From positions 62,001-126,000 of the IMG/VR virus record IMGVR_UViG_3300009011_000002: a stretch of DNA of 64,000 bases. One strand, given 5' to 3'. A model generated the notes under the pieces. That model had not been told where the DNA came from. It did not search any database and saw only the letters and a program-made list of their open reading frames with translations. Position numbers and translations under genes: made by a program. The number at the start of each line of letters is the position of its first letter. The first letter of the stretch is position 1. Shown here piece after piece: positions 5,970-37,311 of the stretch.

Positions 5970-6851
5970 TTACCCATTGAGGTTGTAGGTATAGTCAATG
6001 TTCTTTACGAACGACTCGAGGGTGTTCTTGTTGTACTTGGGATCCAACGCCGTCCCAAGCGGGGTCTTCTGGTAAGCACGGAAGCGAGTGCAACCGTACA
6101 CCATCGCCGTCATCAAGCACGGCAGTTCACACGCAGCACCCACCACACGCGGACCGATCGACATGAACATGATGGTACTGATCAGTGCGGTGAAGTCTTT
6201 CAGGGTAACCGTCTTCAGCTTGTACAGCCGAGGGTTAGCGTGGATGGCATCGAGGAGTTCTTCCAGCGTACGCAGTTGCGGAAGTTCTTCGATCACACCC
6301 AGGATGTAACCTTTCTCCGCACCGTAGATGGTCCGGATCACGTTGGTCGCCACGAACTGGAGGTCCGTGTTGTTCTCTTCTTCCAAGCAGATGAAGAAGA
6401 ACGCCAGCAACATGTTGAGGGTCATGACCTCATCGGGCAGCAGGTGGGCTTTACTGGCCATCTTGCTACGCACCGCTTCGGTGAACGCCTTGGTCACTTG
6501 GATACGACCGTTCTTCAGCGGGGTCAGGTTACCCTCGGCCACGTCTTGTTGCAGGAACGCCGCCAGCCGCATGATGGTGATCTCGTTGGGAGAGGTCACC
6601 TGGTTGTTGCCTTTGTTGCGGTAAGGACGCTCATCGTAGACGGTAATGGTCTGACGGTTGTACGCCTGGAAGGTCATCGGGAAGGCGAAAACATTCACCC
6701 CCAGATCCGTTTCATGGGTGATAACGAACACGTTATCTTTCTTGGTGGGAGTCAGGCTACGACTGACGTGCAGTGCCGCCAGTGTGCTCTCCACGTTGTC
6801 CGTGGACTTGCTGAGTCTTCCGACCGTCGAATCATAGCCATTGAGAAGCAT
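5970..6851 (-). CDS. Virion structural protein, phiKZ gp28-like (293 aa)
   Basis: ORF divergent from the sheath gene. Assignment is by synteny. Confidence 0.65.
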   Translation of the reverse strand: MLLNGYDSTVGRLSKSTDNVESTLAALHVSRSLTPTKKDNVFVITHETDLGVNVFAFPMTFQAYNRQTITVYDERPYRNKGNNQVTSPNEITIMRLAAFLQQDVAEGNLTPLKNGRIQVTKAFTEAVRSKMASKAHLLPDEVMTLNMLLAFFFICLEEENNTDLQFVATNVIRTIYGAEKGYILGVIEELPQLRTLEELLDAIHANPRLYKLKTVTLKDFTALISTIMFMSIGPRVVGAACELPCLMTAMVYGCTRFRAYQKTPLGTALDPKYNKNTLESFVKNIDYTYNLNG

Positions 6852-6872
6852 GCGAAAAACCCCTAAAAATAA

Positions 6873-6926
6873 TATGTTATGTGCCAGTGGAATATCACAC
6901 TGAATGGCCCAGAAATGGCTTGCATA
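6873..6926. promoter_or_regulatory. Candidate divergent late promoters (TATG motifs)
   Basis: TATG at 6873 and 6878 (+) and at 6923-6926 (-) in the AT-rich divergent gap. phiKZ late promoters centre on TATG, but the motif is short and weak evidence. Confidence 0.3.
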
Positions 6927-6969
6927 CGATTGTTTTAGGACCCCTTCTCAGAACTCATGAGGTTCTCCC

Positions 6970-11940: not shown

Positions 11941-12444
11941 TTAGATCATGCTGCCGCGAGGGATCGGGTTCTGGGAAGCGCTAATCGGCATGATGTGGGT
12001 GGTGCTGTTCGCCACACCGATGTGGTTGGTCTTGCATTTGACCATAGCACCGTAAAGGCTCTCGAGGTAGGAACCGATGTTCTCCTCGATGTCCCAGCTG
12101 GTCACCACCAGGCTGAACTGCGCCAGCGACAGCGCGCTATTACCAAGCAGCAGGGCCAGTTGTTTGTGCGAGTTGTGGACCAGCACGAACTTCTGACCGG
12201 TCCTGGGTGCATGGCGTTCAAACACCACCACGGTACCCAAGCAGGTGCCGACCAGGATCAGTCGACGTTCAGTGTGGGTGCACACCGACTTGACAACTTT
12301 GCCAGCTTCCAGAGGGAAGTCCATGGCGTTCTCGAAGTAACCGTTCTCGCTGCGCCAGGCCGAATTGAAAGGAACGGATTCCTTGATCTTCAGCAGGGCG
12401 TATTCAAAGGCTTTTTCGATTTCGATAGAAGGATCGTTACGCAT
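11941..12444 (-). CDS. Hypothetical early protein (about 167 aa)
   Basis: Start MRNDPSIEIEK at 12444 with RBS AGGA, directly downstream of an early promoter. Confidence 0.75.
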   Translation of the reverse strand: MRNDPSIEIEKAFEYALLKIKESVPFNSAWRSENGYFENAMDFPLEAGKVVKSVCTHTERRLILVGTCLGTVVVFERHAPRTGQKFVLVHNSHKQLALLLGNSALSLAQFSLVVTSWDIEENIGSYLESLYGAMVKCKTNHIGVANSTTHIMPISASQNPIPRGSMI

Positions 12445-14849: not shown

Positions 14850-15083
14850 TTAGAACCAACTAAAAATGAATTTGATAACACACGCAAACACGTAGGCAAT
14901 GGAACCCCAAACGAAGACGATCAGGCACTTTGCCTGAAACAGAATCCATTTGAGGGTCCGAATGTCTTCATCGGCCACTGCCAGTCGGCGCATGTGGTCG
15001 TAATAGGCTTTAAGCTCGTTTACCTTGTAGGACATTACCATCAGGACAATGAACAACCCGAATCCGATCCAGTAGTTCAGCAT
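14850..15083 (-). CDS. Small membrane protein, 77 aa
   Basis: Two hydrophobic segments. Confidence 0.65.
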   Translation of the reverse strand: MLNYWIGFGLFIVLMVMSYKVNELKAYYDHMRRLAVADEDIRTLKWILFQAKCLIVFVWGSIAYVFACVIKFIFSWF

Positions 15084-22377: not shown

Positions 22378-22548
22378 TCAGGCTTCCTTCTTGACGTGGC
22401 GGTTGATCGCCTTGCTGATCTTCTCTTCCACGATTGGATCAGGAAGAGGCTTGAGGTACACGTAACCCACTTTAACGAGGGTCCGCTTGGTGAGTTCCAC
22501 CACGTTCGCTGCCGTGATGGCATTCCGGATGAATGCTTCGTTGGTCAT
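22378..22548 (-). CDS. Small hypothetical protein, 56 aa (below the ORF-track cutoff)
   Basis: AGGAG RBS, reads MTNEAFIRNAITAANVVELTKRTLVKVGYVYLKP...KKEA*, and fills the gap. Confidence 0.6.
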   Translation of the reverse strand: MTNEAFIRNAITAANVVELTKRTLVKVGYVYLKPLPDPIVEEKISKAINRHVKKEA

Positions 22549-22566: not shown

Positions 22567-23496
22567 TCAGTACTGCGTAGCCGCTACAAACCGATTGGTC
22601 GGCAACAGGCCTTCGTAGTAGGCGGTGTAGATGAGGGTGTTGATCTCACCCACAGTGATCTTTCCGTCCTTGTTGAAATCGAAGCCACGGTTTTGGGTAT
22701 AGCCGAGCTTTTCTTTCTCAACGTCTTGACGGAAGATAATCTCATCCGGCTTCTTGCCTACCGCAGCAGGGTAGAAGATGGTGAGGTAGAAATCTTCGAG
22801 GCGAGTGAAACGTTTACCACGCTTCATCCACATCTCGAAATACTTGAAGACCCACTCCAGCTGCTCGAGCTGGGACAGAGTGATCAGCCACTCCACAGTG
22901 ACCCGTGGGTCATTGTAGGTCTGGGCGAGGTCTTGTGCCGCGGCCTTACCGAATTGGATCAGACCGAAGTAGTACGCGCCCGCACCATTACGAATGGTGG
23001 GGGAGAAGGTACGACCCGTTTCGAAGGCAATGCAACCCATGACAGCAGAAGGTGCATCTGCCCACAGATTGTGCTTCTTGCACCAAGCCTTGATCTTGGC
23101 CAGGAATTCAGCCGGCACGTGGGCTGACCAGCCGATGTCGTAGAACTTCAGCTTGTTGTAAGCCCGGAAGCTGGAGAACACCCGGTAGAACCCTGCATAG
23201 GTATTGGTACCCATGCCAGAGATGCCGTCAATCTCGCCGCCATACAGCTTGTACGACTTGAGGTTGCTCTGAATGTTCTTGATACCTTGCAAGGCACCTG
23301 CTTCGCCCGTACCCGCAGAGATCGGCAGCGGGGTGGTGCGACCGCCGTTCACCCGTTGGTCGTAGTCCTGGAACAACGAGGTCACCCCCGCTGCGGTGTT
23401 CTTACCCCAAGCACCGTCGATGGAGCCGGCGTAAACGCCGGCCTCCTTCAACAACACCTGGATGTCTCGTACAGCGTTGAGCATCCGGTAGTTCAT
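22567..23496 (-). CDS. Modular endolysin: two peptidoglycan-binding repeats plus a lysozyme/SLT-like catalytic domain
   Basis: IQVLLKEAGVYAGSIDGAWGKNT and IQSNLKSYKLYGGEIDGISG (PG-binding). Catalytic region FETGRTFSP...GLIQF...QLEWVFKYF. Confidence 0.82.
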   Translation of the reverse strand: MNYRMLNAVRDIQVLLKEAGVYAGSIDGAWGKNTAAGVTSLFQDYDQRVNGGRTTPLPISAGTGEAGALQGIKNIQSNLKSYKLYGGEIDGISGMGTNTYAGFYRVFSSFRAYNKLKFYDIGWSAHVPAEFLAKIKAWCKKHNLWADAPSAVMGCIAFETGRTFSPTIRNGAGAYYFGLIQFGKAAAQDLAQTYNDPRVTVEWLITLSQLEQLEWVFKYFEMWMKRGKRFTRLEDFYLTIFYPAAVGKKPDEIIFRQDVEKEKLGYTQNRGFDFNKDGKITVGEINTLIYTAYYEGLLPTNRFVAATQY

Positions 23497-26400
23497 TACT
23501 TGATACCTCTGTATACCTTGACAGCCTTCAACGAGAACTGCGTCGAGAGCTCGTTGCTCGCCAGCTTGTCGCGTAGGCTCAATACCATTCGGTTGAACAT
23601 ACCCTTAAAGCTCACTTTCGCATCGACCTTACGACCGTCCAAGGTGAATATCGGCTTCTCCATGATGTAGCCAGCGGTACCTTTCATTTGGTTACCGATG
23701 ACATATTTGTCGGCAGTGGTGCTGTAGTCCATCGACTCCACGTACACGGTGACCAACACTTTCTCAGGCGACAACGTCGGTTTGTTAACGTTCAGGCTGT
23801 TTGACACAGAACCCGACTTGACGGTGCTGCCCTCGATCGAGGCGGTGCGTTTGCGATCCTTGTCAGCGTGGGCAATGAACTTACGCACACTGTCCGACAT
23901 CTGTTCAGGGGTCGCGTTGTACTTGACGTCGATGTGAATGATCTTGCCGTGATGGTTAGACCGTTGCTGCTTGATCCCCAAACGGTTGACATCTTCCATA
24001 AGGGAATTTTCTGCCGCGCCACCCACGAGGTGGTCGTCTTCGACTTCGCATAAAATCGAGTCATAGTCGACCTCATCACCGATCTTCACTTTCCAGTTAA
24101 TGATCTGTTTCGAACCCATCAAGAACTGTTTCTTCTTGATGAATGGGGTGATGGATTCCATGGCCAGTTCTTTCGTAATGGCAATGGAGTCTTCATAGGT
24201 GTCTTGGTCTTCTACCATCACTACACGGATCATGCGACCCGCTTTCCAGACCACCTGACCCGGACAGAACACATCCCGATCAAACCACTGGCGGTCCCAA
24301 CCGACCACGTCACCGGCTTTGAACTTATCACCCACCTTCAGGTCAGTGACACGGGTATGGCGGTGGTACTCACCGCTGGCCTCACCAATCTTCAACCCCA
24401 ACGGATAAACGTCAGTGGTCTTGTCGGTGTAGGTCACGGTCATCGAGTCTTCAGTAACCTCGGTCACCTTACCGTCGTCGCGTGCTACCTTACTGTAGAG
24501 TTCCGACGTGCGATGAGCAATCATCGAATCGTAACCCGTCCGGGTAATGTTCGGGGTGTAGTTCTCAGCACTCACAGCTTGCGAAGCCTGAGTACTGGTG
24601 AACATGCCTCGCTTAGGGTCGTCTTTCGACATACCGAAGGCCAGGTTACCCGTTACCGATGCCAAACCTGTCAGAGTCGGTTTCTCTTTCACGGCGATGT
24701 TGCCACGGTAGTCTTCGATGCACGGGTCAGACGTCAGGTAGGTAACGAAACCTACTTTACCGCTGTCCTTGTTCGCCTCGGAGATCTTGCCCTTGTAGCT
24801 GTCCAACTGTACTCGGGCACGTTTCACCATGGAGATCTCACCACGACCCCCAACACCACCGAAGGTCAACTCTTCCTGATCCTTCAGCTGGTGGATCGGG
24901 TTCACCTCTTCCACCAAGTTCACCGAAGTGTCCGTGATGATGTTCATGGTGACGGCTTCAGGGTTAAAGTCGATCTTCTGCTTACGACCCTTGCCCTTGT
25001 TCCGGTACATCCGGATAGCCTTGACCCACTCGCGGTACATATGGCCTGCAAAGCGCTCATACCCCACGATACGCTGTTCTTCCAGTTCCACCTCATGACG
25101 GGTCCAGTCCGTCTCCAACAGCTTCACAGCGTCAATCAGGAGGTAATGGAAGGACTCCGAATAGCCCAACTTCTTCAGTTCCCCTTTGGTGATCGGGTCA
25201 ATGAACAAATCGAACAGGTTCTTCATTTCGAGGAACTGTTTCGGGCGTACCTTGTCGTCACCCATCAGTGGAACCCAGACACCCTTTTCGTTCAGGTTAC
25301 TGCGGCTGAAGTTACTGATGTTGTTCAGACGTGGCATCCCACCGAAGATCAAGGTGGTCAGCTTCTCACGGCGGTTGAAGATCAGGTACTCGTCGTTGAA
25401 GGTAATGGCGTATTCGTCTTCACTCAGTTTCGGACGGTTACCCATCGGTACGGAGCGAGTGGTGGCCTTAATCACCTGCAACAGTTTGTCGATACCGAAG
25501 TAGTAGCACAGCACTACACCCATCGGGAACAGATACCCGCCGATGTTGATCACTGCATACTCGGTAGGCGCTTTTGCCGTACTGATGCCCAGCAGGTTCT
25601 CAACGGTGTTAAACTCCACACCATCGAGGTACAGGTTGCCGTAGCCGTCCACGGTCACTGGCTTGTCGTTCTTCACGCCAATCAGGAAGTCATCCTTCTT
25701 GGTGTGCTTGGAGAACTGCGGGTGTTCAGCCAACAGTTTGTCAATACGGAAGTCAAAGGTTACACCCTTGTCACCACCCGCATTGATCCACTGGAACTTC
25801 GAGGCCAGGATCGAATAGACCCGGGGGCTGTCGTACTTACCGCTCAATGAACTACCACGGTTGTACGTGATGTCTGAACCCGAACGGTTACCACGGCTTG
25901 CCACCTGCTTAACCAACCACGCACCCAGGTCGTCTACCTTCTTCAGGCTACGACTCACCATGAGCTTGCGGTCATAGTAGCTGGTCAATGCTACCTTGAA
26001 CTTGTTGATCTTGCGGATCGGCAATTCCATGCGTTGCAGCTGCATGTGCGACTTCACACCGTCAACGGTAAAGGTACCGTCTTTACCCACCCGTGGCATA
26101 CGGATGTGGTGGGTGGTCTGATCGCCATCTACCGGGTGGACCTGGATGGTGTAGACGTCGTAGCTGCCTTCGACACCCTCAACCACCTCATGCTTGAAGT
26201 CGTTGATGGCGACACCGGCGTTCTGCAAACCAAGCAGCATCATCACGGTGTCTTTGTGGAGGAACTTGTCCACGTAACCTTGCTTGAGCACTTTCGCCCG
26301 GCTACGCTTCATGGACTCGTCCAGCACCACCGGCAGATCAGCTTTGATCTCGGCGTCAGCTTTGAGGGCCTTGTACTCCTCTGGCTTCACCTGGATAAAC

Positions 26401-27896
26401 TCTTCCAGGCTTTGCCCGTTGGCCAACTCGATGTGCTTGAACTGAGTAGCCTTCCGCATGAAGAACTGTTGTTCCGCTACGGTCAGTACCCCTTCCTTCG
26501 CACGCTCTTCCAACGCCAGCGCCACACCGCTTTCGTACGTCGGGAACGGATCCTTCGCCACCGACGTATCGGTAGTGATCTTCTCCTGTTCCAGCAATGC
26601 ATCGTCTACTTCTGCGGTCCAGTCTTCAGCTGCTTCAGAATTATCTCGAGTTCCCTCTTCTCCCGCCCCTTGAACAGATCCTCCGTCAGGTTCTTCGCTA
26701 TTATCGAAAACAGCAAGCATAGGAGCAGTAGTACGAGCAGCTGTGGCATTGTCATCCTTACCAGAAACCCGTCCTTCTTTGGTTTCCCGTTGGGATCCTT
26801 TTGCCGCGCCAGCTCCCTTCGCTCCTGTAGCCACTTGGGTATCCGCCGTGGCTTCTTCTCGGTTCTCATCCTTGGCTTCCTCGACTTCTCCCTCAGAGAG
26901 ACTACCATTTCTGGTAAGGTTCATGAGGGCAAGGTAAACACGCTTCGTGACAGCGAAACGCTTGGGGTGGCTTTCCCGGTGGCTGCCGACGTCTGGAGTT
27001 TTATCCTTGGCCAACTTCTCGAGGAAACGTTTATCGTCCAACTCATTCAGCCAGCCCTTGAGGGTGGCCAGGTTGATGATGAGGGAACGGCTGTTCGACA
27101 CAAAGATCAGATGGAGGGATTGCTCGGCCTTGGGTGTCAGCTTGCTGAACAGGCTGTACTTCCAGTCGCCAAACAGCAAGGCAATCCAGTCCAGCAACCA
27201 ATACGAACTCTCCGCCTTGTTCACCCGCACGGTCTGGTTAGACGGAACAGGCAAACCATTCTTGAAGCTCTTGACATAATGGTCAAAGTCAATCAGCAAC
27301 TCAGACCACGATGGCATGTGAAGTGGTAGGTCGATACGGAAGAACTGTTTACGCTCTTTCGATTTCGCCGCTTCTTCGTTGATGCGGTCCATCAACATCG
27401 AGTACTGGTTGTAATGCCGCTCGAAGTTAACGAACATCGTTGGACGCGGCAACCACATCTTGTTGATCAAGCCGTAGTTGTTGACCACCAACACGTTGTC
27501 TTTGTTGTAGACAGTGTTGATGTCTTTGGTCCAGTTGAAGTTGTAGTGGCTCGCGCGGTACGCCTGGATCGCCTTACGGACATCCATGGCCAACATACGA
27601 CCATTACCGATGACGGGTTCAAACTCCGTCTTAAAGTTGATGAAAACATCACCAGTGAAGTTACTGATGAAAGCTTCCGACGTGGCAGGGCCGTAGTCTT
27701 CCGTGTTCTTTGGGAAGAAGTGGATCAGGCTCGCACGGGGCAGGCTGATCTCCCCGATGCCGATGTAGTTGGGGGTGACCAGCTCTTGCCTTTTGCGTTG
27801 TACGTACCACTTGAAAAACTCGGGATATGTCGCTGCAAGGGCTTCTTCGCCTGTGACAGCTGACAAAGCGGGATTCGCTCCGTTCAGCATCCTCAT
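23496..27896 (-). CDS. Virion RNA polymerase beta subunit, N-terminal/major part (phiKZ gp178-like)
   Basis: 1466 aa. NPIHQLKDQEELTFGGVGGR, SEANKDSGKVG, TYEDSIAI and DKYVIGNQMKG are RpoB-like motifs. Confidence 0.9.
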   Translation of the reverse strand: MRMLNGANPALSAVTGEEALAATYPEFFKWYVQRKRQELVTPNYIGIGEISLPRASLIHFFPKNTEDYGPATSEAFISNFTGDVFINFKTEFEPVIGNGRMLAMDVRKAIQAYRASHYNFNWTKDINTVYNKDNVLVVNNYGLINKMWLPRPTMFVNFERHYNQYSMLMDRINEEAAKSKERKQFFRIDLPLHMPSWSELLIDFDHYVKSFKNGLPVPSNQTVRVNKAESSYWLLDWIALLFGDWKYSLFSKLTPKAEQSLHLIFVSNSRSLIINLATLKGWLNELDDKRFLEKLAKDKTPDVGSHRESHPKRFAVTKRVYLALMNLTRNGSLSEGEVEEAKDENREEATADTQVATGAKGAGAAKGSQRETKEGRVSGKDDNATAARTTAPMLAVFDNSEEPDGGSVQGAGEEGTRDNSEAAEDWTAEVDDALLEQEKITTDTSVAKDPFPTYESGVALALEERAKEGVLTVAEQQFFMRKATQFKHIELANGQSLEEFIQVKPEEYKALKADAEIKADLPVVLDESMKRSRAKVLKQGYVDKFLHKDTVMMLLGLQNAGVAINDFKHEVVEGVEGSYDVYTIQVHPVDGDQTTHHIRMPRVGKDGTFTVDGVKSHMQLQRMELPIRKINKFKVALTSYYDRKLMVSRSLKKVDDLGAWLVKQVASRGNRSGSDITYNRGSSLSGKYDSPRVYSILASKFQWINAGGDKGVTFDFRIDKLLAEHPQFSKHTKKDDFLIGVKNDKPVTVDGYGNLYLDGVEFNTVENLLGISTAKAPTEYAVINIGGYLFPMGVVLCYYFGIDKLLQVIKATTRSVPMGNRPKLSEDEYAITFNDEYLIFNRREKLTTLIFGGMPRLNNISNFSRSNLNEKGVWVPLMGDDKVRPKQFLEMKNLFDLFIDPITKGELKKLGYSESFHYLLIDAVKLLETDWTRHEVELEEQRIVGYERFAGHMYREWVKAIRMYRNKGKGRKQKIDFNPEAVTMNIITDTSVNLVEEVNPIHQLKDQEELTFGGVGGRGEISMVKRARVQLDSYKGKISEANKDSGKVGFVTYLTSDPCIEDYRGNIAVKEKPTLTGLASVTGNLAFGMSKDDPKRGMFTSTQASQAVSAENYTPNITRTGYDSMIAHRTSELYSKVARDDGKVTEVTEDSMTVTYTDKTTDVYPLGLKIGEASGEYHRHTRVTDLKVGDKFKAGDVVGWDRQWFDRDVFCPGQVVWKAGRMIRVVMVEDQDTYEDSIAITKELAMESITPFIKKKQFLMGSKQIINWKVKIGDEVDYDSILCEVEDDHLVGGAAENSLMEDVNRLGIKQQRSNHHGKIIHIDVKYNATPEQMSDSVRKFIAHADKDRKRTASIEGSTVKSGSVSNSLNVNKPTLSPEKVLVTVYVESMDYSTTADKYVIGNQMKGTAGYIMEKPIFTLDGRKVDAKVSFKGMFNRMVLSLRDKLASNELSTQFSLKAVKVYRGIK
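26606..26749 (-). CDS. Candidate overprinted single-pass membrane protein (47 aa) in the +1 frame of vRNAP beta
   Basis: TAAGGA-TGACA-ATG, then MPQLLVLLLLCLLFSIIAKNLTEDLFKGREKRELEIILKQLKTGPQK*. Lies in the low-complexity linker of beta. Confidence 0.4.
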   Translation of the reverse strand: MPQLLVLLLLCLLFSIIAKNLTEDLFKGREKRELEIILKQLKTGPQK

Positions 27897-29532: not shown

Positions 29533-32500
29533 ATGTCCGATGATTTTGACGATTGGGGCGACGACCCCTTCGGTGGTGATCTGGACTTCGACGACGATTT
29601 TGATAAACCGGCGTCCAGTAAGGGCTTCATTCGCAGTTTCGCCACAGGGTTCCTCTCCGGTCTGGTAGAGAAAACGGTGGGGGATACCGATGCCCGCATC
29701 AACACACTGAAGATGGCGCTGCCACGTACCTGGATCGGTACGTTCAGCAACCTCCGCACCTTAAACGACCGTCGTCGTGAGGTGTTGGAAGACATCAAAG
29801 CAGAAAGTTTTACCACCGTACAGGACCTGCAATATTTGGCGGGCCGTGCCGCCAAAAAGTTGTCCGGTGGAGCTACTAATAAAATCTCGGAGCAGCTTAC
29901 CCGGTTCAGTGATCACGACTTCTCTGATTGGGAAAAGCAAGACGGTTCGGTTGATGACTCCGTCAGTATGGAGGACACGTCTGACGAAGACGTAGCCAAC
30001 ATCCTCCAGAATGAAGACGCCAACTCCATGCTCGAACGCGAGACAGTGGAGTCGGTGGGTCGTCGTACCATCAGCGCAATGAACGAAGTCGGTGGTCGTC
30101 AGATCGCCGGTCTCCACCAGCTTGCGTCGGAGATGGTCCGCACCAACAACCATCTGCAAAACCTGGTCGACTACCAACGGAAGGTACAAGCCCGTAACGA
30201 CGCAATGATGCTGAACGTTACGGCACGGCATTACCTGACCAGTGCCAAGTTCTACAAGTTCATGGAAGCGAGCCAACACCGGTCGATCCAAGAACTGAAG
30301 ATGATCACCAAGTTTTCCCGGATGTCCGATTACGAGAAGACCTCCACCGGTGACGCCTTCAAACGTTCCATGCGTGAGTCGATCTTCAACACCGCCAAGA
30401 GTTCCTTTGGTGGTATCCGTGATTTCATCATGGATAAGTTCGGCAAGGACACACGGGACGGTGCAATCAGTTCGGTAGGTGAGATTGCCGGTGCACTTCG
30501 GATGGCGTCTGAGATGTCCGAAGGCATGCCGATGGATTACGGCAACATGCTGGGTAACGCAGCAGCCGGTATCTTCATCAACAACTTGCCGAAGATGATC
30601 AAGTCGGATACTGGTCAGAAGTACCTCGACAAGTTCAAGAAGCAGTTCCCGAAACAAGCGAAGTGGGCGGAAGACGCTTACATCCGTATCGAGGACTTGG
30701 GTAACGTCGCGACCTACTTCACGGGTAATGCCGAGGGTACGGTTAACACCATGGCGAAGCATTACCGCTCCGACATGATGAACGACGAACCCGAGACCTA
30801 CGAAGAGTACGTAGACAGCCTGGACGATCCAGAGAAGGCTATCTCGAAGCTGGACTGGACCCTGACCCACCATGGACGTAAGGTGGCTAACAAGGGCTTG
30901 TCGAGCGTTCTGGAGAACATGTGGAACAGCGACGGCAGTAGCTACTCGTTGACCAAGCGTTCCCTCAAGGACAGCTTCGAGCGTCACTGGTGGACCCGTC
31001 AGTCTGACCGTACCCTGAACGAGATCATCCCGGCATGGTTCTCCAAGCTGCACCTGTCGCTGGAACAGATCCGGACTGGTAGTGATACTGTCCAGGCGGA
31101 GTCTTACGACTACGTCAAGGGTAAGTTCATCAGTGAGAAGCAGAAGGTTGCCACCGCTGTTAACACGGTACTGAATCACGACCAGTTCAGCATGCAGGCC
31201 AATGCGGCGAAAGACCTGGTTACCAACATCGACGTCGACAACGCATTGAGCCCGAAGGCTAAAGAAGCACTGGCCTTCCGCTTGGCGCGGGACACCGACA
31301 AGAAGTTGGGCTTCAACCCGTACAACTACCTCCGCTTCGAAGACGACGATGAACTCGACCGCATGCCTAAAAAGGTGCAGGACGAGATCCGTAAGGTCAT
31401 GATGGCGAACTTCGGTATTACCGAAGACCACATGAAGACCTTCTTCGAGACGGGTACGAACTACGACGTAGGCAAGATGTTGAACTACATGCCTACTGAA
31501 GAAGGTCGTAAGTTGCTGGCCAACGTATTCGAGCAGGCAAACACCCTGTCCGAGTTTGTACCAGATGTCAGTAACTCGTTGGACGTGATGCGTTCTACCG
31601 GGAGTTACGATGCCCTGAAACAAGCGGGTATCATCCGGACGAACGAACACGGCCAGGAGGAGGTTTCGAATGACCTGCTGTGGAACACCTTCCGTCAGTA
31701 CATCAAAGATCCAACCCGTAAGTCGGCAGCCATGCCGAAGGACCAACCAGTCCTGCCTACCAGGCCGTGGGGAGGCCACAACGGTGGACCTGATGCATTG
31801 CCACCGGTTCCAGGCAATCCTTCTCCTAATGGCCCTGGCGGCGCTCCTGCTGCTATCCAAGTGGAAGGGATGGACAAGGTCGTTGAGTCGTTGGGTAACC
31901 TCGACCAACTGAAGCAAGTACTGGCTGGTTTCCAAGGATTCCCGTCGGCTTCTCAGCTTGACCTGACCCCGGTTTCGACTGGGTTGGAAAGTCTTAACAC
32001 CAAGATCGCGGAGATCGTTACCCTCAACGGGGTGAACAACGATCTGTTGACCAAGATCCTGGAACGCCAACCGATTGCTCCGACAGGGGGTGGGCCTACC
32101 CCTCAAGAAGAATCGACCATCCAGAAAGCCAAACGAAGCCTGATTGAAAAGATTAAAGGGTTCTCGGTGAAAGACACCTTCAACAAGGGTGTCGAGATGC
32201 TGCTGGACCACGAACCAATGATCTTGGGTGGTCTGTTGGGTGGTATGGGTATGCTGGCCTTCCACAACCCTAAAGCGGCTGCTTTGATAGGCGGCGGTGC
32301 AGCGGTTGCGTTGGCGTACGGCAAGATCCGTAACTTGGCGATGGCCCGCAATGCGGATGACTCGGAAGACCTTTACGAGGAAGGGAGTACCACACCTATC
32401 CTCGAAGCTAACAAACTGGCCAACAAGAACTACTACGACGCGACGAAAGGTTTCCTCATCGAGAGCTGGAGTCAGATCACTGGTAGTGTACGGGACGCAA

Positions 32501-35500
32501 CCAACGACACCGTGATTGGTGCACGTCGCTTGGCAGGTAAGTTGTTCACTGCCGAGAACAAGGAAGTGTTCCTGAAAGGTTTGGACAAGGTGCGGGAGTG
32601 GATGGTCAAGGCCTTCCACATGATCGATCCATTCGGTCGCATGACCCGCATGAAGGACAAGTTGGTCGGTCGCTTCAAACAGATGGACGTCTATAAGGAA
32701 GGGGATGATGAGCCTACCTTGCTCGGTAAGAGTTTTGCGGGCGGTGCTTACTACAAGCAAGTAGACGGCAACATGGTCGTGTTGAATGGGTGGGATGAAA
32801 TTGACGGACCGGTCTATGATCGAGACGGCAATATGCTGATCACTCAGGAAGACTACGACCGTGGGCTGAAAACGTCCATGGGTGTTAGCATCAACAAACT
32901 GGGCGCCCTTGGTAAGCGCTCAATGGGTCTTCTGAAACAACTGGGTCTGAAGATCAAGGAGAAGGCTGCACCTTACGCTGGGAAAGCGAAAGACGGTGTG
33001 GTCAGTGCCTTCAAAGCCGACTACTCCCCTATCATTACCTCGGTTGACCGCATTCATAACCTGCTGTTGAAACACTGGGGTTATCAATCCGAAGCGCTGC
33101 CAAAAGCAGATGCCAACGAGGAAGTGGATCAGGACGGTAACCCGAGTCAAGAGGTTCCTCCTGAGGAAGCGGCTCGTCGTGAGGAGGAGGACAAAACGCC
33201 GAAGGGTGAAGCGGGTAAAGGGTTCCTGGGTAACATCACTGATGCGGTACGCCAGTCCGTGACTAACCGGCTTAACTCTGCTGCTGACAAAGAGCAGAAG
33301 GCCAAGGACGCCAAAACCGAAGAAGCCCAAGATGCCCTCATCAACATCAGCAAGAACTTTGCTGGTATGGGTGGGAAAGAAGATAAGAAGAAGAAGACCG
33401 GATTCTTCGGTATGCTTTCGAGTATCTTCAGTGGCATGACCTCCGCGATGCTCGGTATCTCCAAGTTCATGTTTGGCCCGATGTGGGGCGCCCTGAAACT
33501 GATGGGGACCTTTGCGTCGGTGGGTATCAAGGCGCTGCCGTTCATTGCAACGGGTATCGGTGCTTTGACCAAGGGGATCTTCGCACTGCTCAGTAAAGGG
33601 GGTGGGGTTGCAGGTGACCTGCTGGGTGGTATCACCGGTAAGGGTCGTCGGGGTCAACCACCACGGACGAATAAGAGCCGGATGTTGTCTGGCGCTAAAG
33701 GTGTGGGGATTGGTCTGGCAGTACTGGGGGCTACTGATGCCCTGGCTGCTAGCGGTGCAGTGGATCCAAATGGTGTGGTAGGCAGCGTACTGGATGGTGT
33801 GGGCACTGCCGCGAACATTTACGGTGGTGTTCAACTGGCTAGTGCGGCTGCAGGCTTGGCTGGTACCAGCCTGACGGGTATTGCAACTACAGCGGCTGGT
33901 TTTGCTGCGCCGTTGCTGTTCAACCCGATCACGTTGGGCGCGTTGGCGATAGGTGCTGCGGGTTACGGGATCTACAAATTCGTGACGCGTGGTGCAGGGA
34001 AACAACTCGAGATCCGGATGGCGCAGTACGGCTGTCAGGACATCGAGAGTGAACTGGCGAAGAAGATCCTCAAAGCGGAAGAGATGTTGACGGAGTTCGT
34101 GGTGATTGGTAATGCCCGAGCGTCGATGGACCGTCGCGCCCCACTGGAAGAGGTCATCAAGCTGTTCGTTGAAGATCCAAAGAACAACAAGGAAGTAGGC
34201 TCTGTCTACACCTGGTTCAATGGTCGCTTCAAGCCAGTCTTCCTGACGTACATGGCATGCCTCGATGTGGTCAAGATGAAGTCGTTGAAAGAATACGACG
34301 AGTCGAAAGACCGCAACGTGTACAACGTGGCGAAGCAAACCCACCAAGCGCTGTCTGCTGTGATGCCTTTCCCGTATGGGGTCGTGGCAAAGGTCGATCG
34401 GGATACTCCTATCATGGGAGAGAAGGCGACGGTCATTCGGATTAACAATCTGTTGCCGGAGCTTAAGGCTTACATCGACCGCCACACCTCGAAGAAGGAT
34501 GAGATCAAACCAGTCGACACCCCAGCAAGTATTCCCGTCTTGCAACAAGAGAAGGCGAAGCTGGAAGAGGCCCTGAAGAACCCTGCCAAGAACTTCGGCT
34601 CTGGTGTGGAATCCATCAAGCGGCAGGACGAAGCCCGTAACCGGTTGGCGACGATTGATAATCAGCTTAAACAACTGAACAACAATTACAAAGCCGGTAG
34701 TGTAGTGGCGGGTGTGTTCATCAAGGACTTGCTCCCTGAAGACCGTGCGATGGACCTGATGACCGCCATTCGTGTGGCGTGCTACGGTAACGATCAGGAT
34801 GTCCCATGGCGTGTCGAAGCTGTCCTGCGGTTGGAGCGTTACTCGGAGCAGTACCTCGTGTACAACGGGGATAAGGTAACCTTCAATGGACAGATCGGTG
34901 ATTTGTTCGGGCAGTTCAAAGATGCGTTCCGCTTGGACGATGGGGATGCAGAGGACTGGTGCAAGTGGTACCGTGATCGTTTCCTGCCGGTGTTCCTCAA
35001 CTACGCGCAGACGATGATGCAGTACCGTAAGGGTCGTCCAGGTTTGGTGTGGAAGTCCCTGTCGGCCACGGCACGTTACGAAATCAGCCGAGCCCTGATC
35101 GAAACCAAGGCGGAGATCACGAAGGCATTGATCGTTCCTATTTGGAACGTGAAGGTCTCTCCGTTCAAGGAAGGCGGTCGTTCGGCGGATCGCTACGACA
35201 AAATCGACCGTATGCTGAAACTGCTGGGTGAGGCCAGCACACAGGCTAAGCTCCGTGATCCTGAGGCGGAAGCAGGTCGTACCAACAGCAGCACGTGGGC
35301 CAATGCCATCTCCCCCCACAAGACGGGCGGTGGTTACACTGAGAAGCAGTTCAACACCATGACTGCAGATCAGGCACAGAACAAACGTGATGTAGCTGCG
35401 GGTGGGATGTACGGAACGAACACAGTTCGGGGCGCTGGCACCGGGAACACCTTCGGGGGCGGTGGGGTTTACAATACCCCCGCAACTCAATACGGTTATA

Positions 35501-37311
35501 AGCCGTTGACAGGTGACTCGGACACTAGCCACCTCGACATGAGTGGTGTTAAACCGCACGGTGCTCAGGGATCTGACACCGGGGTTAAAGTTCCGAAGAA
35601 GTTGGCGGAACAGCTTGTCATTCGCGAGATGTTGAAACAAGGCTTCACTGACCCTCGCGAAATCGCCATGTTGTTGGCACTCACCAACTACGAATCGGGC
35701 GGTTACTCCCAGACTGTTGAGAACATGAAGTACAGCAGTCCGGATCGTTTGGTCAAGATGTTCAAAGAAGTAACCAGCATCGAGCAAGCGAAGCAACTGA
35801 TTGCCGGTGGTGAAGTAGCCATTGCGAACGCGGTGTACGGTGGGGCTAAAGGTGCAAGCCTTGGCAACAACGAACCGGGTGACGGGTACAAGTTCCGGGG
35901 TCGTGGCTTCAACCACCTCACCGGTAAGGCTAACTACGCGAAGTATGCGAGGGCCTTGGGCGTTGACCTGGTTAACAAGCCAGAGTTGCTGTCGACTGAT
36001 CCTAACGTAATGGCTGCAGTAGCTGTCGAGTTCTACAAGAACAGCAAGCAGATGCAAGCGATCAAGGCTAACGGTGACTTCGGGTATGCTGCCAAGGGCT
36101 TGAACGGCGGCAATGCGCTCCCAGGCATGGACAAGCGTTACTCCATGTACTTGGACTACCTGAAGCAACTGGAGTCTGGCACTCTGAAGGCGGACCAAGA
36201 CAGTGCGGCTGGAGTGAATGCTCCAGATCCTGCTGCTGATCCGGGTGCGGGGGGTATGTACGCACCGATACCGAAGAGTGCTGCTCCGATGTTGGGAAGT
36301 GGCGCTGCACCGATGGTGGGTGCTGCTCCTGGTGGCGGGATGATGGGTGGAGGGCAGTACACCACACCATCTTCTGCTGGAGGGGGTGCCCCTGCGGGTG
36401 GTGGGGCTTACAGCGGCAACTACGGCAACCAAGGTGGCCCTGCTCCTTTGGGTACAGGCGCACCGGGTAGTGGGGCGGGTCTCCGTCTCAAGTCGCCGGA
36501 AGCGGTTGCTGGTGGTGCTCACCATCCGGGTGTAGACGCAGCGTGCAAAATGATTCAGCAGCGGGTGCCTAACTTCCGCTACTGGTCTGCATTGAACGAC
36601 GCGTACCATGTGCAGAAAGGTTCGAAGGGCGCCCACCCTAAAGGCCTGGCTGCGGACTTCACGTTAACGAACGGTGCTGCGGGCAGTGATGTTGCTGTTC
36701 GTATTGTTCAAGAGATCTTCGGACAGGCTGGGTTAACCGGTGCTGACGTAATGGTCATCAATGAATACCGGACGAAAACAGCCATTGGTACCGGCGGGCA
36801 CGTACACTTCCACTTCAAGTCGCCACAAGCAGCGCAGAAGTTCCTTGCAGCTGCTGGAGGATCGCAAGAGAACGGACAAGACACCACACCGGCCGGTGGA
36901 GGCCCAGTACAGGAACAGGACCGCGGGCAACCCGCAGCCCCTCCTGAGCAACCTACCGGGACAGTCCCAGCAGACACGGCGCAGCAGATGGCAGCGAACA
37001 ACGCCGCCGCTAATGCTCCAGCTGCTGCGGCTAGCCCTGCAGGCCAAGCCTCCAATGTTCCACCAGCCCCAAGCCCTGCACCTCAACAGGCCGCTGCTCC
37101 AACGCCAGCACCTCCTCCGCGAGCGAAAGCTCCTGAGCCGGCACCGGCGCCACAAGCAGCACCGCCGATTGATACGGCAGCCTTAACCCAAGCCATTGCG
37201 CAAGCAGTGTCTGCGGGTGACCAAGCAACGGTGGTGCTCCTTAAGGGTATCCTTGAGGAGTTGAAGAAATTCAACGCCAACGCTTCGAAAGCCAGCAGGG
37301 TGACAGTCTAG
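29533..37311 (+). CDS. Tape-measure / tail-associated lysin (phiKZ gp181-like) with GH19 and M15-type peptidase domains
   Basis: 2592 aa, helical N-terminal region with hydrophobic Gly/Ala segments. GH19 motifs YESGG...GN.EPGDGYKFRGRGFNHLTGKANY. Peptidase motif H-x6-D...HxH (GAHPKGLAAD...GHVHF). Pro/Ala-rich tail. Confidence 0.85.
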   Translation: MSDDFDDWGDDPFGGDLDFDDDFDKPASSKGFIRSFATGFLSGLVEKTVGDTDARINTLKMALPRTWIGTFSNLRTLNDRRREVLEDIKAESFTTVQDLQYLAGRAAKKLSGGATNKISEQLTRFSDHDFSDWEKQDGSVDDSVSMEDTSDEDVANILQNEDANSMLERETVESVGRRTISAMNEVGGRQIAGLHQLASEMVRTNNHLQNLVDYQRKVQARNDAMMLNVTARHYLTSAKFYKFMEASQHRSIQELKMITKFSRMSDYEKTSTGDAFKRSMRESIFNTAKSSFGGIRDFIMDKFGKDTRDGAISSVGEIAGALRMASEMSEGMPMDYGNMLGNAAAGIFINNLPKMIKSDTGQKYLDKFKKQFPKQAKWAEDAYIRIEDLGNVATYFTGNAEGTVNTMAKHYRSDMMNDEPETYEEYVDSLDDPEKAISKLDWTLTHHGRKVANKGLSSVLENMWNSDGSSYSLTKRSLKDSFERHWWTRQSDRTLNEIIPAWFSKLHLSLEQIRTGSDTVQAESYDYVKGKFISEKQKVATAVNTVLNHDQFSMQANAAKDLVTNIDVDNALSPKAKEALAFRLARDTDKKLGFNPYNYLRFEDDDELDRMPKKVQDEIRKVMMANFGITEDHMKTFFETGTNYDVGKMLNYMPTEEGRKLLANVFEQANTLSEFVPDVSNSLDVMRSTGSYDALKQAGIIRTNEHGQEEVSNDLLWNTFRQYIKDPTRKSAAMPKDQPVLPTRPWGGHNGGPDALPPVPGNPSPNGPGGAPAAIQVEGMDKVVESLGNLDQLKQVLAGFQGFPSASQLDLTPVSTGLESLNTKIAEIVTLNGVNNDLLTKILERQPIAPTGGGPTPQEESTIQKAKRSLIEKIKGFSVKDTFNKGVEMLLDHEPMILGGLLGGMGMLAFHNPKAAALIGGGAAVALAYGKIRNLAMARNADDSEDLYEEGSTTPILEANKLANKNYYDATKGFLIESWSQITGSVRDATNDTVIGARRLAGKLFTAENKEVFLKGLDKVREWMVKAFHMIDPFGRMTRMKDKLVGRFKQMDVYKEGDDEPTLLGKSFAGGAYYKQVDGNMVVLNGWDEIDGPVYDRDGNMLITQEDYDRGLKTSMGVSINKLGALGKRSMGLLKQLGLKIKEKAAPYAGKAKDGVVSAFKADYSPIITSVDRIHNLLLKHWGYQSEALPKADANEEVDQDGNPSQEVPPEEAARREEEDKTPKGEAGKGFLGNITDAVRQSVTNRLNSAADKEQKAKDAKTEEAQDALINISKNFAGMGGKEDKKKKTGFFGMLSSIFSGMTSAMLGISKFMFGPMWGALKLMGTFASVGIKALPFIATGIGALTKGIFALLSKGGGVAGDLLGGITGKGRRGQPPRTNKSRMLSGAKGVGIGLAVLGATDALAASGAVDPNGVVGSVLDGVGTAANIYGGVQLASAAAGLAGTSLTGIATTAAGFAAPLLFNPITLGALAIGAAGYGIYKFVTRGAGKQLEIRMAQYGCQDIESELAKKILKAEEMLTEFVVIGNARASMDRRAPLEEVIKLFVEDPKNNKEVGSVYTWFNGRFKPVFLTYMACLDVVKMKSLKEYDESKDRNVYNVAKQTHQALSAVMPFPYGVVAKVDRDTPIMGEKATVIRINNLLPELKAYIDRHTSKKDEIKPVDTPASIPVLQQEKAKLEEALKNPAKNFGSGVESIKRQDEARNRLATIDNQLKQLNNNYKAGSVVAGVFIKDLLPEDRAMDLMTAIRVACYGNDQDVPWRVEAVLRLERYSEQYLVYNGDKVTFNGQIGDLFGQFKDAFRLDDGDAEDWCKWYRDRFLPVFLNYAQTMMQYRKGRPGLVWKSLSATARYEISRALIETKAEITKALIVPIWNVKVSPFKEGGRSADRYDKIDRMLKLLGEASTQAKLRDPEAEAGRTNSSTWANAISPHKTGGGYTEKQFNTMTADQAQNKRDVAAGGMYGTNTVRGAGTGNTFGGGGVYNTPATQYGYKPLTGDSDTSHLDMSGVKPHGAQGSDTGVKVPKKLAEQLVIREMLKQGFTDPREIAMLLALTNYESGGYSQTVENMKYSSPDRLVKMFKEVTSIEQAKQLIAGGEVAIANAVYGGAKGASLGNNEPGDGYKFRGRGFNHLTGKANYAKYARALGVDLVNKPELLSTDPNVMAAVAVEFYKNSKQMQAIKANGDFGYAAKGLNGGNALPGMDKRYSMYLDYLKQLESGTLKADQDSAAGVNAPDPAADPGAGGMYAPIPKSAAPMLGSGAAPMVGAAPGGGMMGGGQYTTPSSAGGGAPAGGGAYSGNYGNQGGPAPLGTGAPGSGAGLRLKSPEAVAGGAHHPGVDAACKMIQQRVPNFRYWSALNDAYHVQKGSKGAHPKGLAADFTLTNGAAGSDVAVRIVQEIFGQAGLTGADVMVINEYRTKTAIGTGGHVHFHFKSPQAAQKFLAAAGGSQENGQDTTPAGGGPVQEQDRGQPAAPPEQPTGTVPADTAQQMAANNAAANAPAAAASPAGQASNVPPAPSPAPQQAAAPTPAPPPRAKAPEPAPAPQAAPPIDTAALTQAIAQAVSAGDQATVVLLKGILEELKKFNANASKASRVTV

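What the first reader, a model, noticed from the sequence alone, without database searches (positions are those of the whole stretch)
26606..26755. Possible overprinted membrane protein (holin/lysis-regulator candidate) inside vRNAP beta
Seen: in the acidic, low-complexity linker of beta the codons shift to T/A-ending, and the +1 frame is open from 26908 to 26606. A strong SD (TAAGGA) lies 5 nt before ATG 26749, within a Met-Thr-Met pair. The product MPQLLVLLLLCLLFSIIAKNLTEDLFKGREKRELEIILKQLKTGPQK has one clean TM helix and a charged amphipathic tail. The next gene on this strand, coupled by TAATG, is the endolysin. Established: overprinted lysis genes (Rz1, phiX174 E) and dual-start holins (lambda S) exist, and a canonical holin has been hard to identify in phiKZ-like phages. 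Inference: a hidden lysis or membrane gene that exploits a tolerant RNAP linker. Caveat: NCT codons for Ala/Thr/Pro automatically give Leu in the +1 frame.
Basis: partly seen in the sequence, partly recalled or inferred. Interest (0 to 1): 0.7.

Follow-up and report, generated by a model that had tools for sequence, protein, structure and literature searches.

The report
Hidden membrane-protein gene inside phage RNAP gene
A small, previously unannotated gene for a single-pass membrane protein is written in a second reading frame inside the virion RNA polymerase gene of a whole clade of giant (phiKZ-related) phages, just upstream of their endolysin, and it is the best current candidate for the missing lysis-timing protein (holin) of these phages.

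Summary

**The gene.** It lies at window 26606-26869 (minus strand) and encodes 87 aa. It starts at a conserved ATG at 26869, with GAGGA 8 nt upstream.

**Evidence that it is real**
- The same +1-frame ORF sits at the same place in all 23 beta homologues of one clade, which includes EL, RisingSun, Miami/KPN8, VP4B, OBP and about 20 metagenomic phages. It is absent from phiKZ, Goslar and five other lineages.
- Within the ORF, and only there, beta's third codon position is the most conserved and its first position the most variable.
- The +1 translations score 24-94 bits against profiles built from other lineages. Synonymous-codon shuffles of beta score at most 24 bits.
- Both frames are kept open.

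**The product.** It has a basic N-terminus predicted to be cytoplasmic, one transmembrane helix ending in an invariant Ser, and a charged C-terminal helix.

**Relatives.** It matches no known family, and no stand-alone homologue turned up among 1.84 billion representative proteins.

**Function.** An EL188- or OBPgp279-type endolysin follows beta in every positive genome. The clade has no detectable homologue of the phiKZ holin gp142. A holin or lysis-regulator role is therefore plausible, at about 0.45, but remains inference.

The parts
26606..26869 (-). Overprinted gene: 87 codons plus a TAG stop at 26606-26608, in the +1 frame of the vRNAP beta gene
   Evidence: The ORF is. It is conserved in 23 of 23 clade members. 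The codon-position signature is confined to beta aa 330-431. The leave-clade-out HMM test against synonymous shuffles gives z = 8-27.
26867..26869 (-). Conserved ATG start codon
   Evidence: An ATG lies at the aligned position or within a few codons of it in all 20 sequences of A3 and in KPN8, VP4B and FishSpeaker. OBP has none there, and its first ATG lies further downstream. In L001, L003, L004, L006 and L007 a +1-frame stop lies 4-6 codons upstream, which excludes longer forms.
26878..26882 (-). Shine-Dalgarno-like GAGGA, 8 nt before the ATG
   Evidence: Read. Duplex energy with the anti-SD is -5.9 kcal/mol. A GAGGA or GGAGG 7-10 nt upstream of the equivalent ATG is found in most lineages (-6 to -11.6 kcal/mol); L019, L043, L051, L056, L009/L021 and L053 have only AAGGA- or AGGGA-type sites.
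26756..26866 (-). Basic N-terminal domain (residues 2-38), with invariant Trp13 and Arg17 in a short helix
   Evidence: A3 alignment. AF2 predicts a helix at residues 12-24. Mean 12.9 K/R against 5.7 D/E. The +1-frame selection pattern is present here.
26696..26755 (-). Transmembrane segment (residues 39-58), ending at invariant Ser55 in a small-xxx-small motif
   Evidence: Hydropathy. Ser55 is invariant. Beta's third codon position, which is the second position of this frame, has a diversity of 0.027 here against a gene mean of 0.29.
26609..26695 (-). Charged C-terminal helix (residues 59-87), with nearly invariant Arg72-Glu73
26747..26760 (-). At most a secondary start.
   Evidence: Present in the window. 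Neither the Met nor the SD is conserved across lineages.
26870..26908 (-). Upstream in-frame extension to ATG 26908. Probably not translated.
   Evidence: No SD (+0.4 kcal/mol). The extension is interrupted by stop codons in five relatives.
23496..27896 (-). Host gene: virion RNA polymerase beta-type large subunit, 1466 aa, homologue of phiKZ gp178
   Evidence: phrog_3148 with E = 0. tblastn to 311 phage records. phiKZ homologue.
26616..26897 (-). Acidic low-complexity linker of beta (about aa 334-427), which is the dual-coding stretch
   Evidence: Given the +1 protein, the beta frame would stay open in only about 1% of resamplings.
26706..26723 (-). Short motif conserved in the beta frame, (P/S)-(I/L/M)-L-x-(V/A/I/L)-(F/L). 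It lies under the end of the transmembrane segment.
   Evidence: Seen in all relatives. Its function is unknown.
22567..23496 (-). Endolysin: a peptidoglycan-binding domain plus an EL188-type catalytic domain. Its start overlaps the beta stop in TAATG.
   Evidence: PF01471. 47% identity to EL188. The same slot is filled in all positive genomes.

Best explanation
**What it is (shown)**
Window 26606-26869 (minus strand) is a real protein-coding gene overprinted in the +1 frame on the disordered acidic linker of the virion RNA polymerase beta-type subunit gene.
- Both frames are maintained.
- The +1 frame is the more strongly selected of the two.

**How it is expressed (inferred)**
- It is transcribed late, on the same mRNA as beta and the endolysin.
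- Ribosomes start independently at the conserved ATG 26869, behind a GAGGA.
- The product is an 87-aa protein that spans the inner membrane once. It has a basic cytoplasmic N-terminus, one transmembrane helix with a small-xxx-small motif, and a 29-residue charged helix on the periplasmic side.

**What it does (inferred)**
Its most likely job is in host lysis. I think it acts as a class-III-topology holin, or as a regulator of one, that controls when the signal-less endolysin encoded just downstream reaches the cell wall.

**My probabilities**
- About 0.93 that it is a real, selected gene.
- About 0.35 that it is the holin.
- About 0.45 that it is lysis-related at all, which is the figure entered as confidence.
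For: **The gene is real**
1. In the close cluster L003-L007, beta's codon positions 1/2/3 vary by 0.07-0.15 / 0.03-0.10 / 0.25-0.39 in the flanks. In the linker they vary by 0.253 / 0.145 / 0.102.
2. Of 1444 sliding windows of 30 codons along beta, all 75 with pos3 < pos1 lie in beta aa 330-431, which is exactly the ORF.
3. In 11 lineages the real +1 translation scores 24-94 bits against a profile built from the other lineages. 500 synonymous resamplings of beta average 0-4 bits and reach at most 24 (z = 8-27).
4. Over the same nucleotides, +1-frame amino-acid identity exceeds beta-frame identity in 185 of 190 pairs.
5. Presence of the ORF maps to one side of a 100/100-supported branch of the beta tree, 23 rows against 7.
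6. The ATG and SD are conserved, and stops lie just upstream of them.

**Membrane protein**
- Hydropathy and charge distribution support it.
- AF2 predicts one long helix at residues 41-83.

**Lysis role**
- An EL188- or OBPgp279-type endolysin without a signal sequence follows beta in every positive genome, even where the catalytic domain has been exchanged.
- The phiKZ holin gp142 and regulator gp143 have homologues only in phiKZ-type Pseudomonas phages, and none in this clade.
- gp142 has the same topology: N-in, one TMD, small periplasmic tail (PMC12894885).
- This genome's spanin pair stands alone, without a holin next to it.
Against: **No expression data.** There is no RNA, ribosome or peptide evidence, and public runs held only fragments.

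**Function is circumstantial**
- The ORF ends 3.1 kb upstream of the endolysin start, so the two are not tightly adjacent.
- It shows no similarity to gp142 (hhalign probability 0.2%) or to any Pfam, PHROG or Atlas family.
- The genome has other small membrane ORFs that could be the holin, for example G000 148706-148936 and window 14850-15083.
- Deimos-Minion has an EL188-type lysin in the same slot without this ORF.
- The ORF-endolysin association reflects only one or two evolutionary events, so it carries little statistical weight.

**Openness is partly compositional.** Under the null, P(no +1 stop) is 0.008-0.77 per lineage.

**Self-association.** The prediction returned no answer.
Confidence: 0.45

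Rival explanations
1. The gene is real and overprinted, but its membrane protein has nothing to do with lysis. It could act in superinfection exclusion, in control of host membrane or division, in anchoring an assembly or ejection step of the virion RNA polymerase, or in something unknown.
For: - All the evidence that the gene is real applies here too.
- Small single-pass proteins are common in phage genomes, and most are not holins.
- The ORF is nested in a virion-protein gene, not in a recognisable lysis cassette.
- The spanins lie about 110 kb away.
- Other candidate holins exist in the genome.
- It matches no holin family.
Against: - A conserved endolysin is the next gene in 23 of 23 positive genomes.
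- No other holin is recognisable in the clade.
- Size, topology and the charged C-terminus fit a holin.
Confidence: 0.42
2. There is no gene. The open +1 frame, the Leu-rich stretch and the SD-like sites are by-products of an acidic, Ala/Thr/Pro-rich low-complexity linker with T/A-ending codons.
For: - +1-frame stops need a T at beta codon position 2, which is rare in acidic linkers.
- P(no stop) under synonymous resampling reaches 0.77 in one lineage.
- GAG-GAA codons automatically give GAGGA.
- 18 comparable +1 ORFs exist in the genome.
- phiKZ has a similar linker and no such ORF.
Against: Composition cannot explain any of the following:
- Beta's third position is the most conserved position only inside the ORF.
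- The z = 8-27 excess of profile scores over synonymous shuffles.
- Higher amino-acid identity in the +1 frame in 185 of 190 pairs.
- The hydrophobic peak was reached in 0 of 500 resamplings in most lineages.
Confidence: 0.05
3. The +1 frame is reached by programmed ribosomal frameshifting from beta. This would give a fusion of the beta N-terminal domain to a membrane anchor instead of a free 87-aa protein.
For: In the window the +1 frame stays open 17 codons upstream of ATG 26869. The ORF lies right after the N-terminal domain, which 201phi2-1 removes as a propeptide (PMC5694885).
Against: - In L001, L003, L004, L006 and L007 a +1-frame stop lies only 4-6 codons before the conserved ATG, leaving almost no room for a shift site.
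- The ATG and its SD are conserved.
- I noticed no conserved slippery sequence, but I did not search for one systematically.
Confidence: 0.03
4. The main or an additional product is the reader's short form (47-49 aa) starting at Met39/Met41. Together with the long form it could make a holin/antiholin pair, as in lambda S105/S107.
For: TAAGGA lies 5 nt before ATG 26749 in the window (-5.9 to -6.5 kcal/mol). A Met just before the TMD is present in most soil-clade members.
Against: - The Met is replaced in L001, EL, RisingSun, OBP and N1M2.
- The SD is missing in L003-L007.
- The N-terminal 38 codons are under +1-frame selection, so the long form is made.
Confidence: 0.1

Closest known systems
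Lambda Rz1 nested in Rz (o-spanin gene inside the i-spanin gene, +1 frame)
   Same: - A complete small envelope-protein gene lies in the +1 frame inside another phage gene.
- It has its own SD and start.
- Both frames are functional.
- It belongs to late-gene, lysis-related context.
   Different: - Rz1 is an outer-membrane lipoprotein whose host gene is its own functional partner. Here the product is a single-pass inner-membrane protein.
- Here the host gene is an RNA polymerase subunit with an unrelated function.
- The window's own genome has a separate Rz/Rz1-like pair elsewhere.
phiX174 E inside D, and MS2 L across coat/replicase (overprinted single-TMD lysis proteins)
   Same: - A short protein with one transmembrane segment is overprinted in the +1 frame on an essential gene.
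- Like L, it has a basic N-terminal half and a conserved Ser at the end of the hydrophobic segment.
   Different: - Those are single-gene lysis proteins of tiny phages that lack endolysins.
- This phage has an endolysin and spanins, so a holin or regulator role fits better than an amurin-type role.
- There is no sequence similarity.
phiKZ gp142, the class III(B) holin of the gp141-144 lysis cassette (PMC12894885)
   Same: - Predicted N-in topology.
- One TMD.
- A short periplasmic C-terminal tail of about 29 residues.
- It comes from a jumbo phage of the same broad family, whose endolysin has no signal sequence.
   Different: - gp142 is a stand-alone gene of 131 aa with a folded cytoplasmic domain of about 75 residues that binds the regulator gp143.
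- It lies next to the spanins and the endolysin.
- No similarity to it was detected.
- gp142 and gp143 are absent from the clade that carries the nested ORF.
T4 gpt (class III holin)
   Same: One TMD with N-in, C-out topology. Its gene is not adjacent to the endolysin gene.
   Different: gpt has a large periplasmic domain and is 218 aa long. There is no similarity, and gpt is not overprinted.

Membership tests
Overprinted (nested) protein-coding gene | A complete ORF in an alternative frame lies wholly inside another gene that is itself functional | tested here: met
   The ORF at 26606-26869 lies inside beta at 23496-27896. Given the +1 protein, the beta frame stays open by chance in only about 1% of resamplings, yet it is open in all lineages.
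Overprinted (nested) protein-coding gene | Purifying selection acts on the alternative frame, shown by suppressed synonymous change in the host frame and frame-specific periodicity | tested here: met
   Searches give the position-specific variability. One search gives the profile scores against synonymous shuffles. One search gives the identity comparison.
Overprinted (nested) protein-coding gene | Own translation start signals | tested here: met
   The ATG and a GAGGA/GGAGG 7-10 nt upstream are conserved in most lineages. The SD overlaps Glu codons of beta, so part of this is compositional.
Overprinted (nested) protein-coding gene | The product is made in infected cells | not testable with these tools
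   Public runs held only short fragments outside the ORF.
Holin (functional class; class III topology) | Small protein with at least one TMD and a charged, hydrophilic C-terminus | tested here: met
   87 aa with one hydrophobic segment of about 20 residues. The C-terminal 29 residues carry 8 K/R and 5 D/E.
Holin (functional class; class III topology) | N-in, C-out orientation | tested here: inconclusive
   The positive-inside rule favours N-in: net +7 at the N-terminus against +2 at the C-terminus. No topology predictor or experiment was available.
Holin (functional class; class III topology) | Gene clustered with the endolysin | tested here: inconclusive
   The endolysin is the next gene in 23 of 23 positive genomes. 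However, it starts 3.1 kb downstream of the ORF's stop, and the association amounts to one or two evolutionary events.
Holin (functional class; class III topology) | Timed lethal membrane lesion that an uncoupler can trigger and that releases a soluble endolysin | not testable with these tools
   This needs expression and complementation assays.
Known holin sequence families (Pfam Phage_holin families, PHROG lysis families, phiKZ gp142 family) | Significant sequence or profile similarity | tested here: not met
   No Pfam or PHROG family at a credible E-value. hhalign against gp142 gives probability 0.2%. The Atlas shows only unnamed look-alikes scoring at most 0.85.
i-spanin (Rz-like) | N-terminal TMD followed by a long periplasmic coiled-coil domain, with an o-spanin gene embedded or next to it | tested here: not met
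   The periplasmic tail has only 29 residues. A separate i-/o-spanin pair exists at G000 195668-196478.

The most novel reading that the evidence does not exclude
The nested ORF is the long-missing holin of the EL/OBP/RisingSun/Miami-type jumbo phages. It is a protein family born de novo by overprinting on the disordered linker of an essential virion RNA polymerase subunit gene in the clade's common ancestor. Since then it has dictated the sequence of that linker, so that an enzyme's spacer is now shaped mainly by the lysis protein written across it.
Probability: 0.33. Interest if true: 0.85.

Novelty: new member of a known kind. Interest (0 to 1): 0.72.

Why it matters
**An unannotated gene in well-studied phages.**
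- The gene is absent from every public annotation I looked at: EL, OBP, RisingSun, KPN8, VP4B, N1M2, FishSpeaker, AH04, AhC3_1 and D6.
- The clade makes up roughly 70 of the 311 phage records with a beta homologue (10 of 45 evenly spaced rows).
- It includes phages used for endolysin engineering and for biocontrol.

**A testable candidate for an open question.** No holin has been identified for this clade, and this ORF can be tested directly in the lambda complementation system already used for phiKZ gp142.

**A clean case of overprinting.** The younger frame is now the better conserved of the two, and a whole disordered linker of an RNA polymerase subunit is dual-coding.

**A warning about method.**
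- Standard gene callers miss such genes.
- Among 1.84 billion representative proteins, the search returned six small ones that match the family. The one whose contig I examined was called only because the assembly had truncated the host gene.

Tried and rejected
- **tblastn of the 87-aa protein against the phage collection.** No hit at E <= 0.01. The protein is too short and too divergent for this search.
- **Pfam, PHROGs and ESM Atlas.** None gave a credible family.
- **hhalign against the phiKZ holin gp142.** No similarity. The P-x-x-x-E...L-K resemblance of the C-terminal tails that I saw by eye is therefore dropped.
- **tblastn of phiKZ gp141-gp144 against the window's own genome.** Only one weak hit came up (window 12007-12207, E = 7e-5). 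It falls on an ORF antisense to a longer gene and was rejected as coiled-coil noise.
- **AF2 model.** It shows only helices, with pLDDT 68, so no fold search was worthwhile.
- **Homotetramer prediction.** The verdict was 'no answer', which counts neither for nor against.
- **Public sequencing runs.** Only 160-240-nt fragments lay on the region, all outside the ORF, including one from an RNA library. There is no expression evidence.
- **Sigma-70 promoter scan.** Not run, because these phages transcribe late genes with their own polymerase.
- **Literature searches.** Five searches found no description of this gene.
Full report
**Setting.** The window is part of a 226,773-bp IMG/VR phage genome with terminal repeats (G000:C1:62001-126000) and 53% G+C.
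- The minus strand carries a 538-aa and a 1466-aa virion RNA polymerase beta-type subunit. The second is at 23496-27896 (phrog_3148, E = 0) and is the homologue of phiKZ gp178.
- A 309-aa protein follows. Its start overlaps the beta stop in TAATG.
- That protein has a peptidoglycan-binding domain (PF01471). It is 47% identical (E = 7e-96) to EL188, a biochemically characterised endolysin (PMC3352856).
- The nearest sequenced relatives are about 57% identical in beta (EL group) or are metagenomic. Nothing closer than about 76% protein identity exists in the collections searched.

**Checking the observation.**
- The +1 ORF at 26606-26908, the TAAGGA at 26760-26755, the ATGs at 26755 and 26749, and the 47-aa hydrophobic-then-charged product are all present.
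- The local codon shift is real. 14 of 20 codons end in T in beta codons 381-400, against 19% for the gene. The surrounding linker is A-rich at third positions.
- ORF length is not special. The genome has 18 ATG-ORFs of at least 100 aa in the +1 frame of 197 genes.
- The hydrophobic peak is the strongest of 772 +1-frame stretches.

**The +1 frame is conserved.** I translated the three forward frames across the linker in nine divergent metagenomic relatives.
- The +1 frame had 0-2 stops, all at its extreme 5' end. The +2 frame had 8-14 stops.
- The +1 translations were visibly more alike than the beta-frame ones.
- The same nested ORF lies at the same place in EL, RisingSun, KPN8 (Miami-like), VP4B, FishSpeaker, OBP, N1M2 and AH04. 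It is present more weakly in AhC3_1 and doubtfully in Aeromonas phage D6. It is also present in all further IMG/VR members of the clade.
- The shared architecture has four parts:
  - a basic N-terminus with an invariant Trp and Arg (W-L-x-x-R);
  - a motif of the form F-L-A-K/R;
  - a hydrophobic segment of about 20 residues ending at an invariant Ser;
  - about 14 further residues, then P-x-E-x-R-E-x-x-I/L-L-K/R-x-L.
- None of the public annotations lists a gene there.
- The ORF is absent from phiKZ, which has nine +1 stops in its own acidic linker. It is also absent from Goslar, Ralstonia phage FLC4-4C, PS119XW, Proteus phage 10, Deimos-Minion and a distant IMG/VR lineage.
- On a maximum-likelihood tree of the C-terminal 1000 residues of beta, the 23 ORF-positive rows form one side of a branch with 100/100 support. 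One gain or one loss therefore suffices.

**Is this selection or composition?** An acidic linker has few T at codon position 2, so few +1 stops are expected anyway. Under synonymous resampling, P(no +1 stop) is 0.008-0.77 per lineage. Four tests go beyond that.
1. *Position-specific variability.* In the close cluster L003-L007, the flanking parts of beta vary by 0.07-0.15 / 0.03-0.10 / 0.25-0.39 at codon positions 1/2/3. The linker varies by 0.253 / 0.145 / 0.102. Beta's third position is the ORF's second position, and beta's first position is the ORF's third. This is therefore the ordinary coding pattern, but in the +1 frame.
2. *Sliding windows.* Of 1444 windows of 30 codons along the whole gene, all 75 with pos3 < pos1 fall within beta aa 330-431, exactly the span of the ORF. 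The minimum third-position diversity is 0.027, against a gene mean of 0.29.
3. *Leave-clade-out profiles.* For 11 lineages I built a profile from the +1 translations of the other lineages. I then scored the real sequence against 500 versions of the same beta protein with resampled synonymous codons. The real sequences score 24-94 bits. The nulls average 0-4 bits and never exceed 24 (z = 8-27). In most lineages the hydrophobic peak was never reproduced.
4. *Identity in the two frames.* Over the same nucleotides, amino-acid identity is higher in the +1 frame in 185 of 190 pairs (0.38 against 0.28).

Conversely, given the +1 protein, the beta frame would remain open in only about 1% of resamplings. 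It is open everywhere, so both frames are maintained. An RNA-structure or other nucleotide-level constraint would not produce a three-periodic, frame-specific pattern.

**Gene limits.**
- An ATG at or within a few codons of that position is found in all 20 sequences of A3 and in KPN8, VP4B and FishSpeaker.
- In most lineages GAGGA or GGAGG lies 7-10 nt upstream of it (window 26878-26882).
- Five relatives have a +1 stop 4-6 codons upstream of it.
- The 38 codons between it and the transmembrane segment show the +1-frame pattern, 0.152 / 0.077 / 0.332.
- The internal Met-Thr-Met and its TAAGGA are missing in L001, EL, RisingSun, OBP and N1M2, and the SD is missing in L003-L007. A short isoform is possible in this phage but is not a family feature.
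- The upstream ATG 26908 has no SD and is not conserved.
- The gene is therefore 26606-26869, encoding 87 aa.

**The product.**
- AF2 with the 20-sequence alignment gives a short helix at residues 12-24, a disordered stretch, and one long helix at residues 41-83 (pLDDT 68).
- The N-terminal part carries on average 12.9 K/R against 5.7 D/E. The C-terminal part carries 6.0 against 3.9. The positive-inside rule therefore places the N-terminus in the cytoplasm. This is inference.
- The transmembrane segment contains a conserved small-xxx-small motif ending at the invariant Ser.
- No Pfam, PHROG or Atlas family matches.
- A full HMMER search of 1.84 billion representative proteins with the family profile found only six small proteins, with E from 1e-15 to 1e-27. 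I examined one of them. It sits on a 1.5-kb contig on which beta is truncated, and the ORF is still nested in the +1 frame. No stand-alone homologue turned up, which fits birth by overprinting.
- The phiKZ-type lineages have the acidic linker without the ORF. A single gain in the EL/OBP clade is therefore the simplest reading, but the tree is unrooted and a loss is not excluded.
- The literature adds that the N-terminal about 275 residues of the 201phi2-1 homologue are removed as a propeptide, while those of SPN3US and phiKZ are not (PMC5694885). This fits a region under weak constraint in the beta frame.

**Function.** This part is inference. Arguments for a role in lysis:
- In all positive genomes the next gene is an endolysin without a signal sequence. 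It is EL188-type in most and OBPgp279-type in OBP and AH04, so the slot is kept even where the catalytic domain was exchanged.
- The experimentally established phiKZ holin gp142 is N-in with one TMD and a small periplasmic tail (PMC12894885). Homologues of gp142 and its regulator gp143 are found only in 65-69 phiKZ-type Pseudomonas phages, and none in this clade. The window's genome has none either.
- That genome has an overlapping Rz/Rz1-like spanin pair at G000 195668-196478. The i-spanin has an N-terminal TMD and a coiled coil, and the o-spanin has the lipobox VSGC. No holin lies beside the pair.

Arguments against:
- The ORF ends 3.1 kb before the endolysin start.
- Other small membrane ORFs exist in the genome.
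- Deimos-Minion has an EL188-type lysin in the slot without the ORF.
- The association rests on one or two evolutionary events.
- There is no similarity to gp142.
- The 56-aa gene after the endolysin (22378-22548) has no TMD, and it exists in phiKZ as gp177.1, so it is not part of a cassette.

I put the holin reading at about 0.35 and any lysis role at about 0.45. The remainder goes mostly to an unrelated membrane function.

**Comparison with known systems.** As a genetic arrangement this belongs with Rz1 in Rz, phiX174 E in D and MS2 L. Each is a small envelope-active protein overprinted in the +1 frame on another phage gene. Three things are new here:
- the protein family itself;
- the host gene, which is an RNA polymerase subunit with no functional link to its guest;
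- the scale, with about 260 nt of dual coding conserved across a deep clade of jumbo phages.

Membership in any holin sequence family was tested and not met. Membership in the functional class 'holin' cannot be decided without experiments.

**Verdict.** The finding is real, and the feature is a new, unannotated gene.

Noticed in passing
own genome, G000:C1:195668-196478 (outside the window): An overlapping Rz/Rz1-like spanin pair. The 194-aa protein has an N-terminal TMD and a coiled-coil-like region. A lipoprotein ORF in another frame overlaps its 3' half (signal peptide, lipobox VSGC). The pair stands about 110 kb from the endolysin, and no holin-like gene lies beside it.
   Followed up: partly
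window 26706-26723 (-), beta frame: A short hydrophobic motif, (P/S)-(I/L/M)-L-x-(V/A/I/L)-(F/L), is conserved in the beta frame in the middle of the otherwise unalignable acidic linker. It lies exactly under the end of the nested gene's transmembrane segment, so both frames seem constrained at this spot. Its role in beta is unknown.
   Followed up: partly
L023 (EL) 4689-5147 and L028 (FishSpeaker) 4680-5085: In EL-type phages and FishSpeaker the beta gene is annotated as two CDSs separated by about 400-460 nt, and tblastn matches it in two pieces. An HNH endonuclease gene lies just upstream of the gene. This looks like an intron-type interruption, which the window's gene does not have.
   Followed up: no
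L026 (OBP) 5855-6841, L072 (AH04) 6842-7828, against window 22567-23496: The endolysin slot after beta is conserved, but the catalytic domain differs. It is EL188-type in the window, EL, RisingSun, KPN8, VP4B, N1M2 and FishSpeaker, and OBPgp279-type in OBP and AH04. Only the peptidoglycan-binding repeats are shared, so the domain was swapped in place.
   Followed up: partly
window 14850-15083 (-); also G000:C1:148706-148936 (-): Two small ORFs (77 and 76 aa), each with two predicted transmembrane segments. They are alternative holin candidates in this genome.
   Followed up: no
L062-L064, beta +1-frame codons 287-424: A distant lineage that lacks the nested gene still has a 137-codon open +1 stretch at the same place in beta. 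It has no profile match (1 bit) and only weak hydrophobicity. It could be chance, or an independent or decayed ORF.
   Followed up: no
window 22378-22548 (-): A 56-aa ORF after the endolysin, with no TMD. It is conserved in position across the family (EL gp189, OBP_280 'putative virion structural protein', phiKZ gp177.1) and is followed by a virion structural protein gene.
   Followed up: partly
proteins P0001-P0006; L073: The only database 'proteins' of this family. The one whose contig I examined (P0002, on L073) sits on a short contig where assembly truncated the host gene, so the gene caller picked the nested ORF. The other five contigs were not examined.
   Followed up: partly
window 29533-37311 (+): A 2592-aa ORF lies divergently next to the polymerase genes. 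In relatives the corresponding gene is annotated as a tail-associated lysin, transglycosylase or chitinase (as phiKZ gp181 is). A second, virion-borne cell-wall hydrolase therefore flanks this gene block.
   Followed up: no
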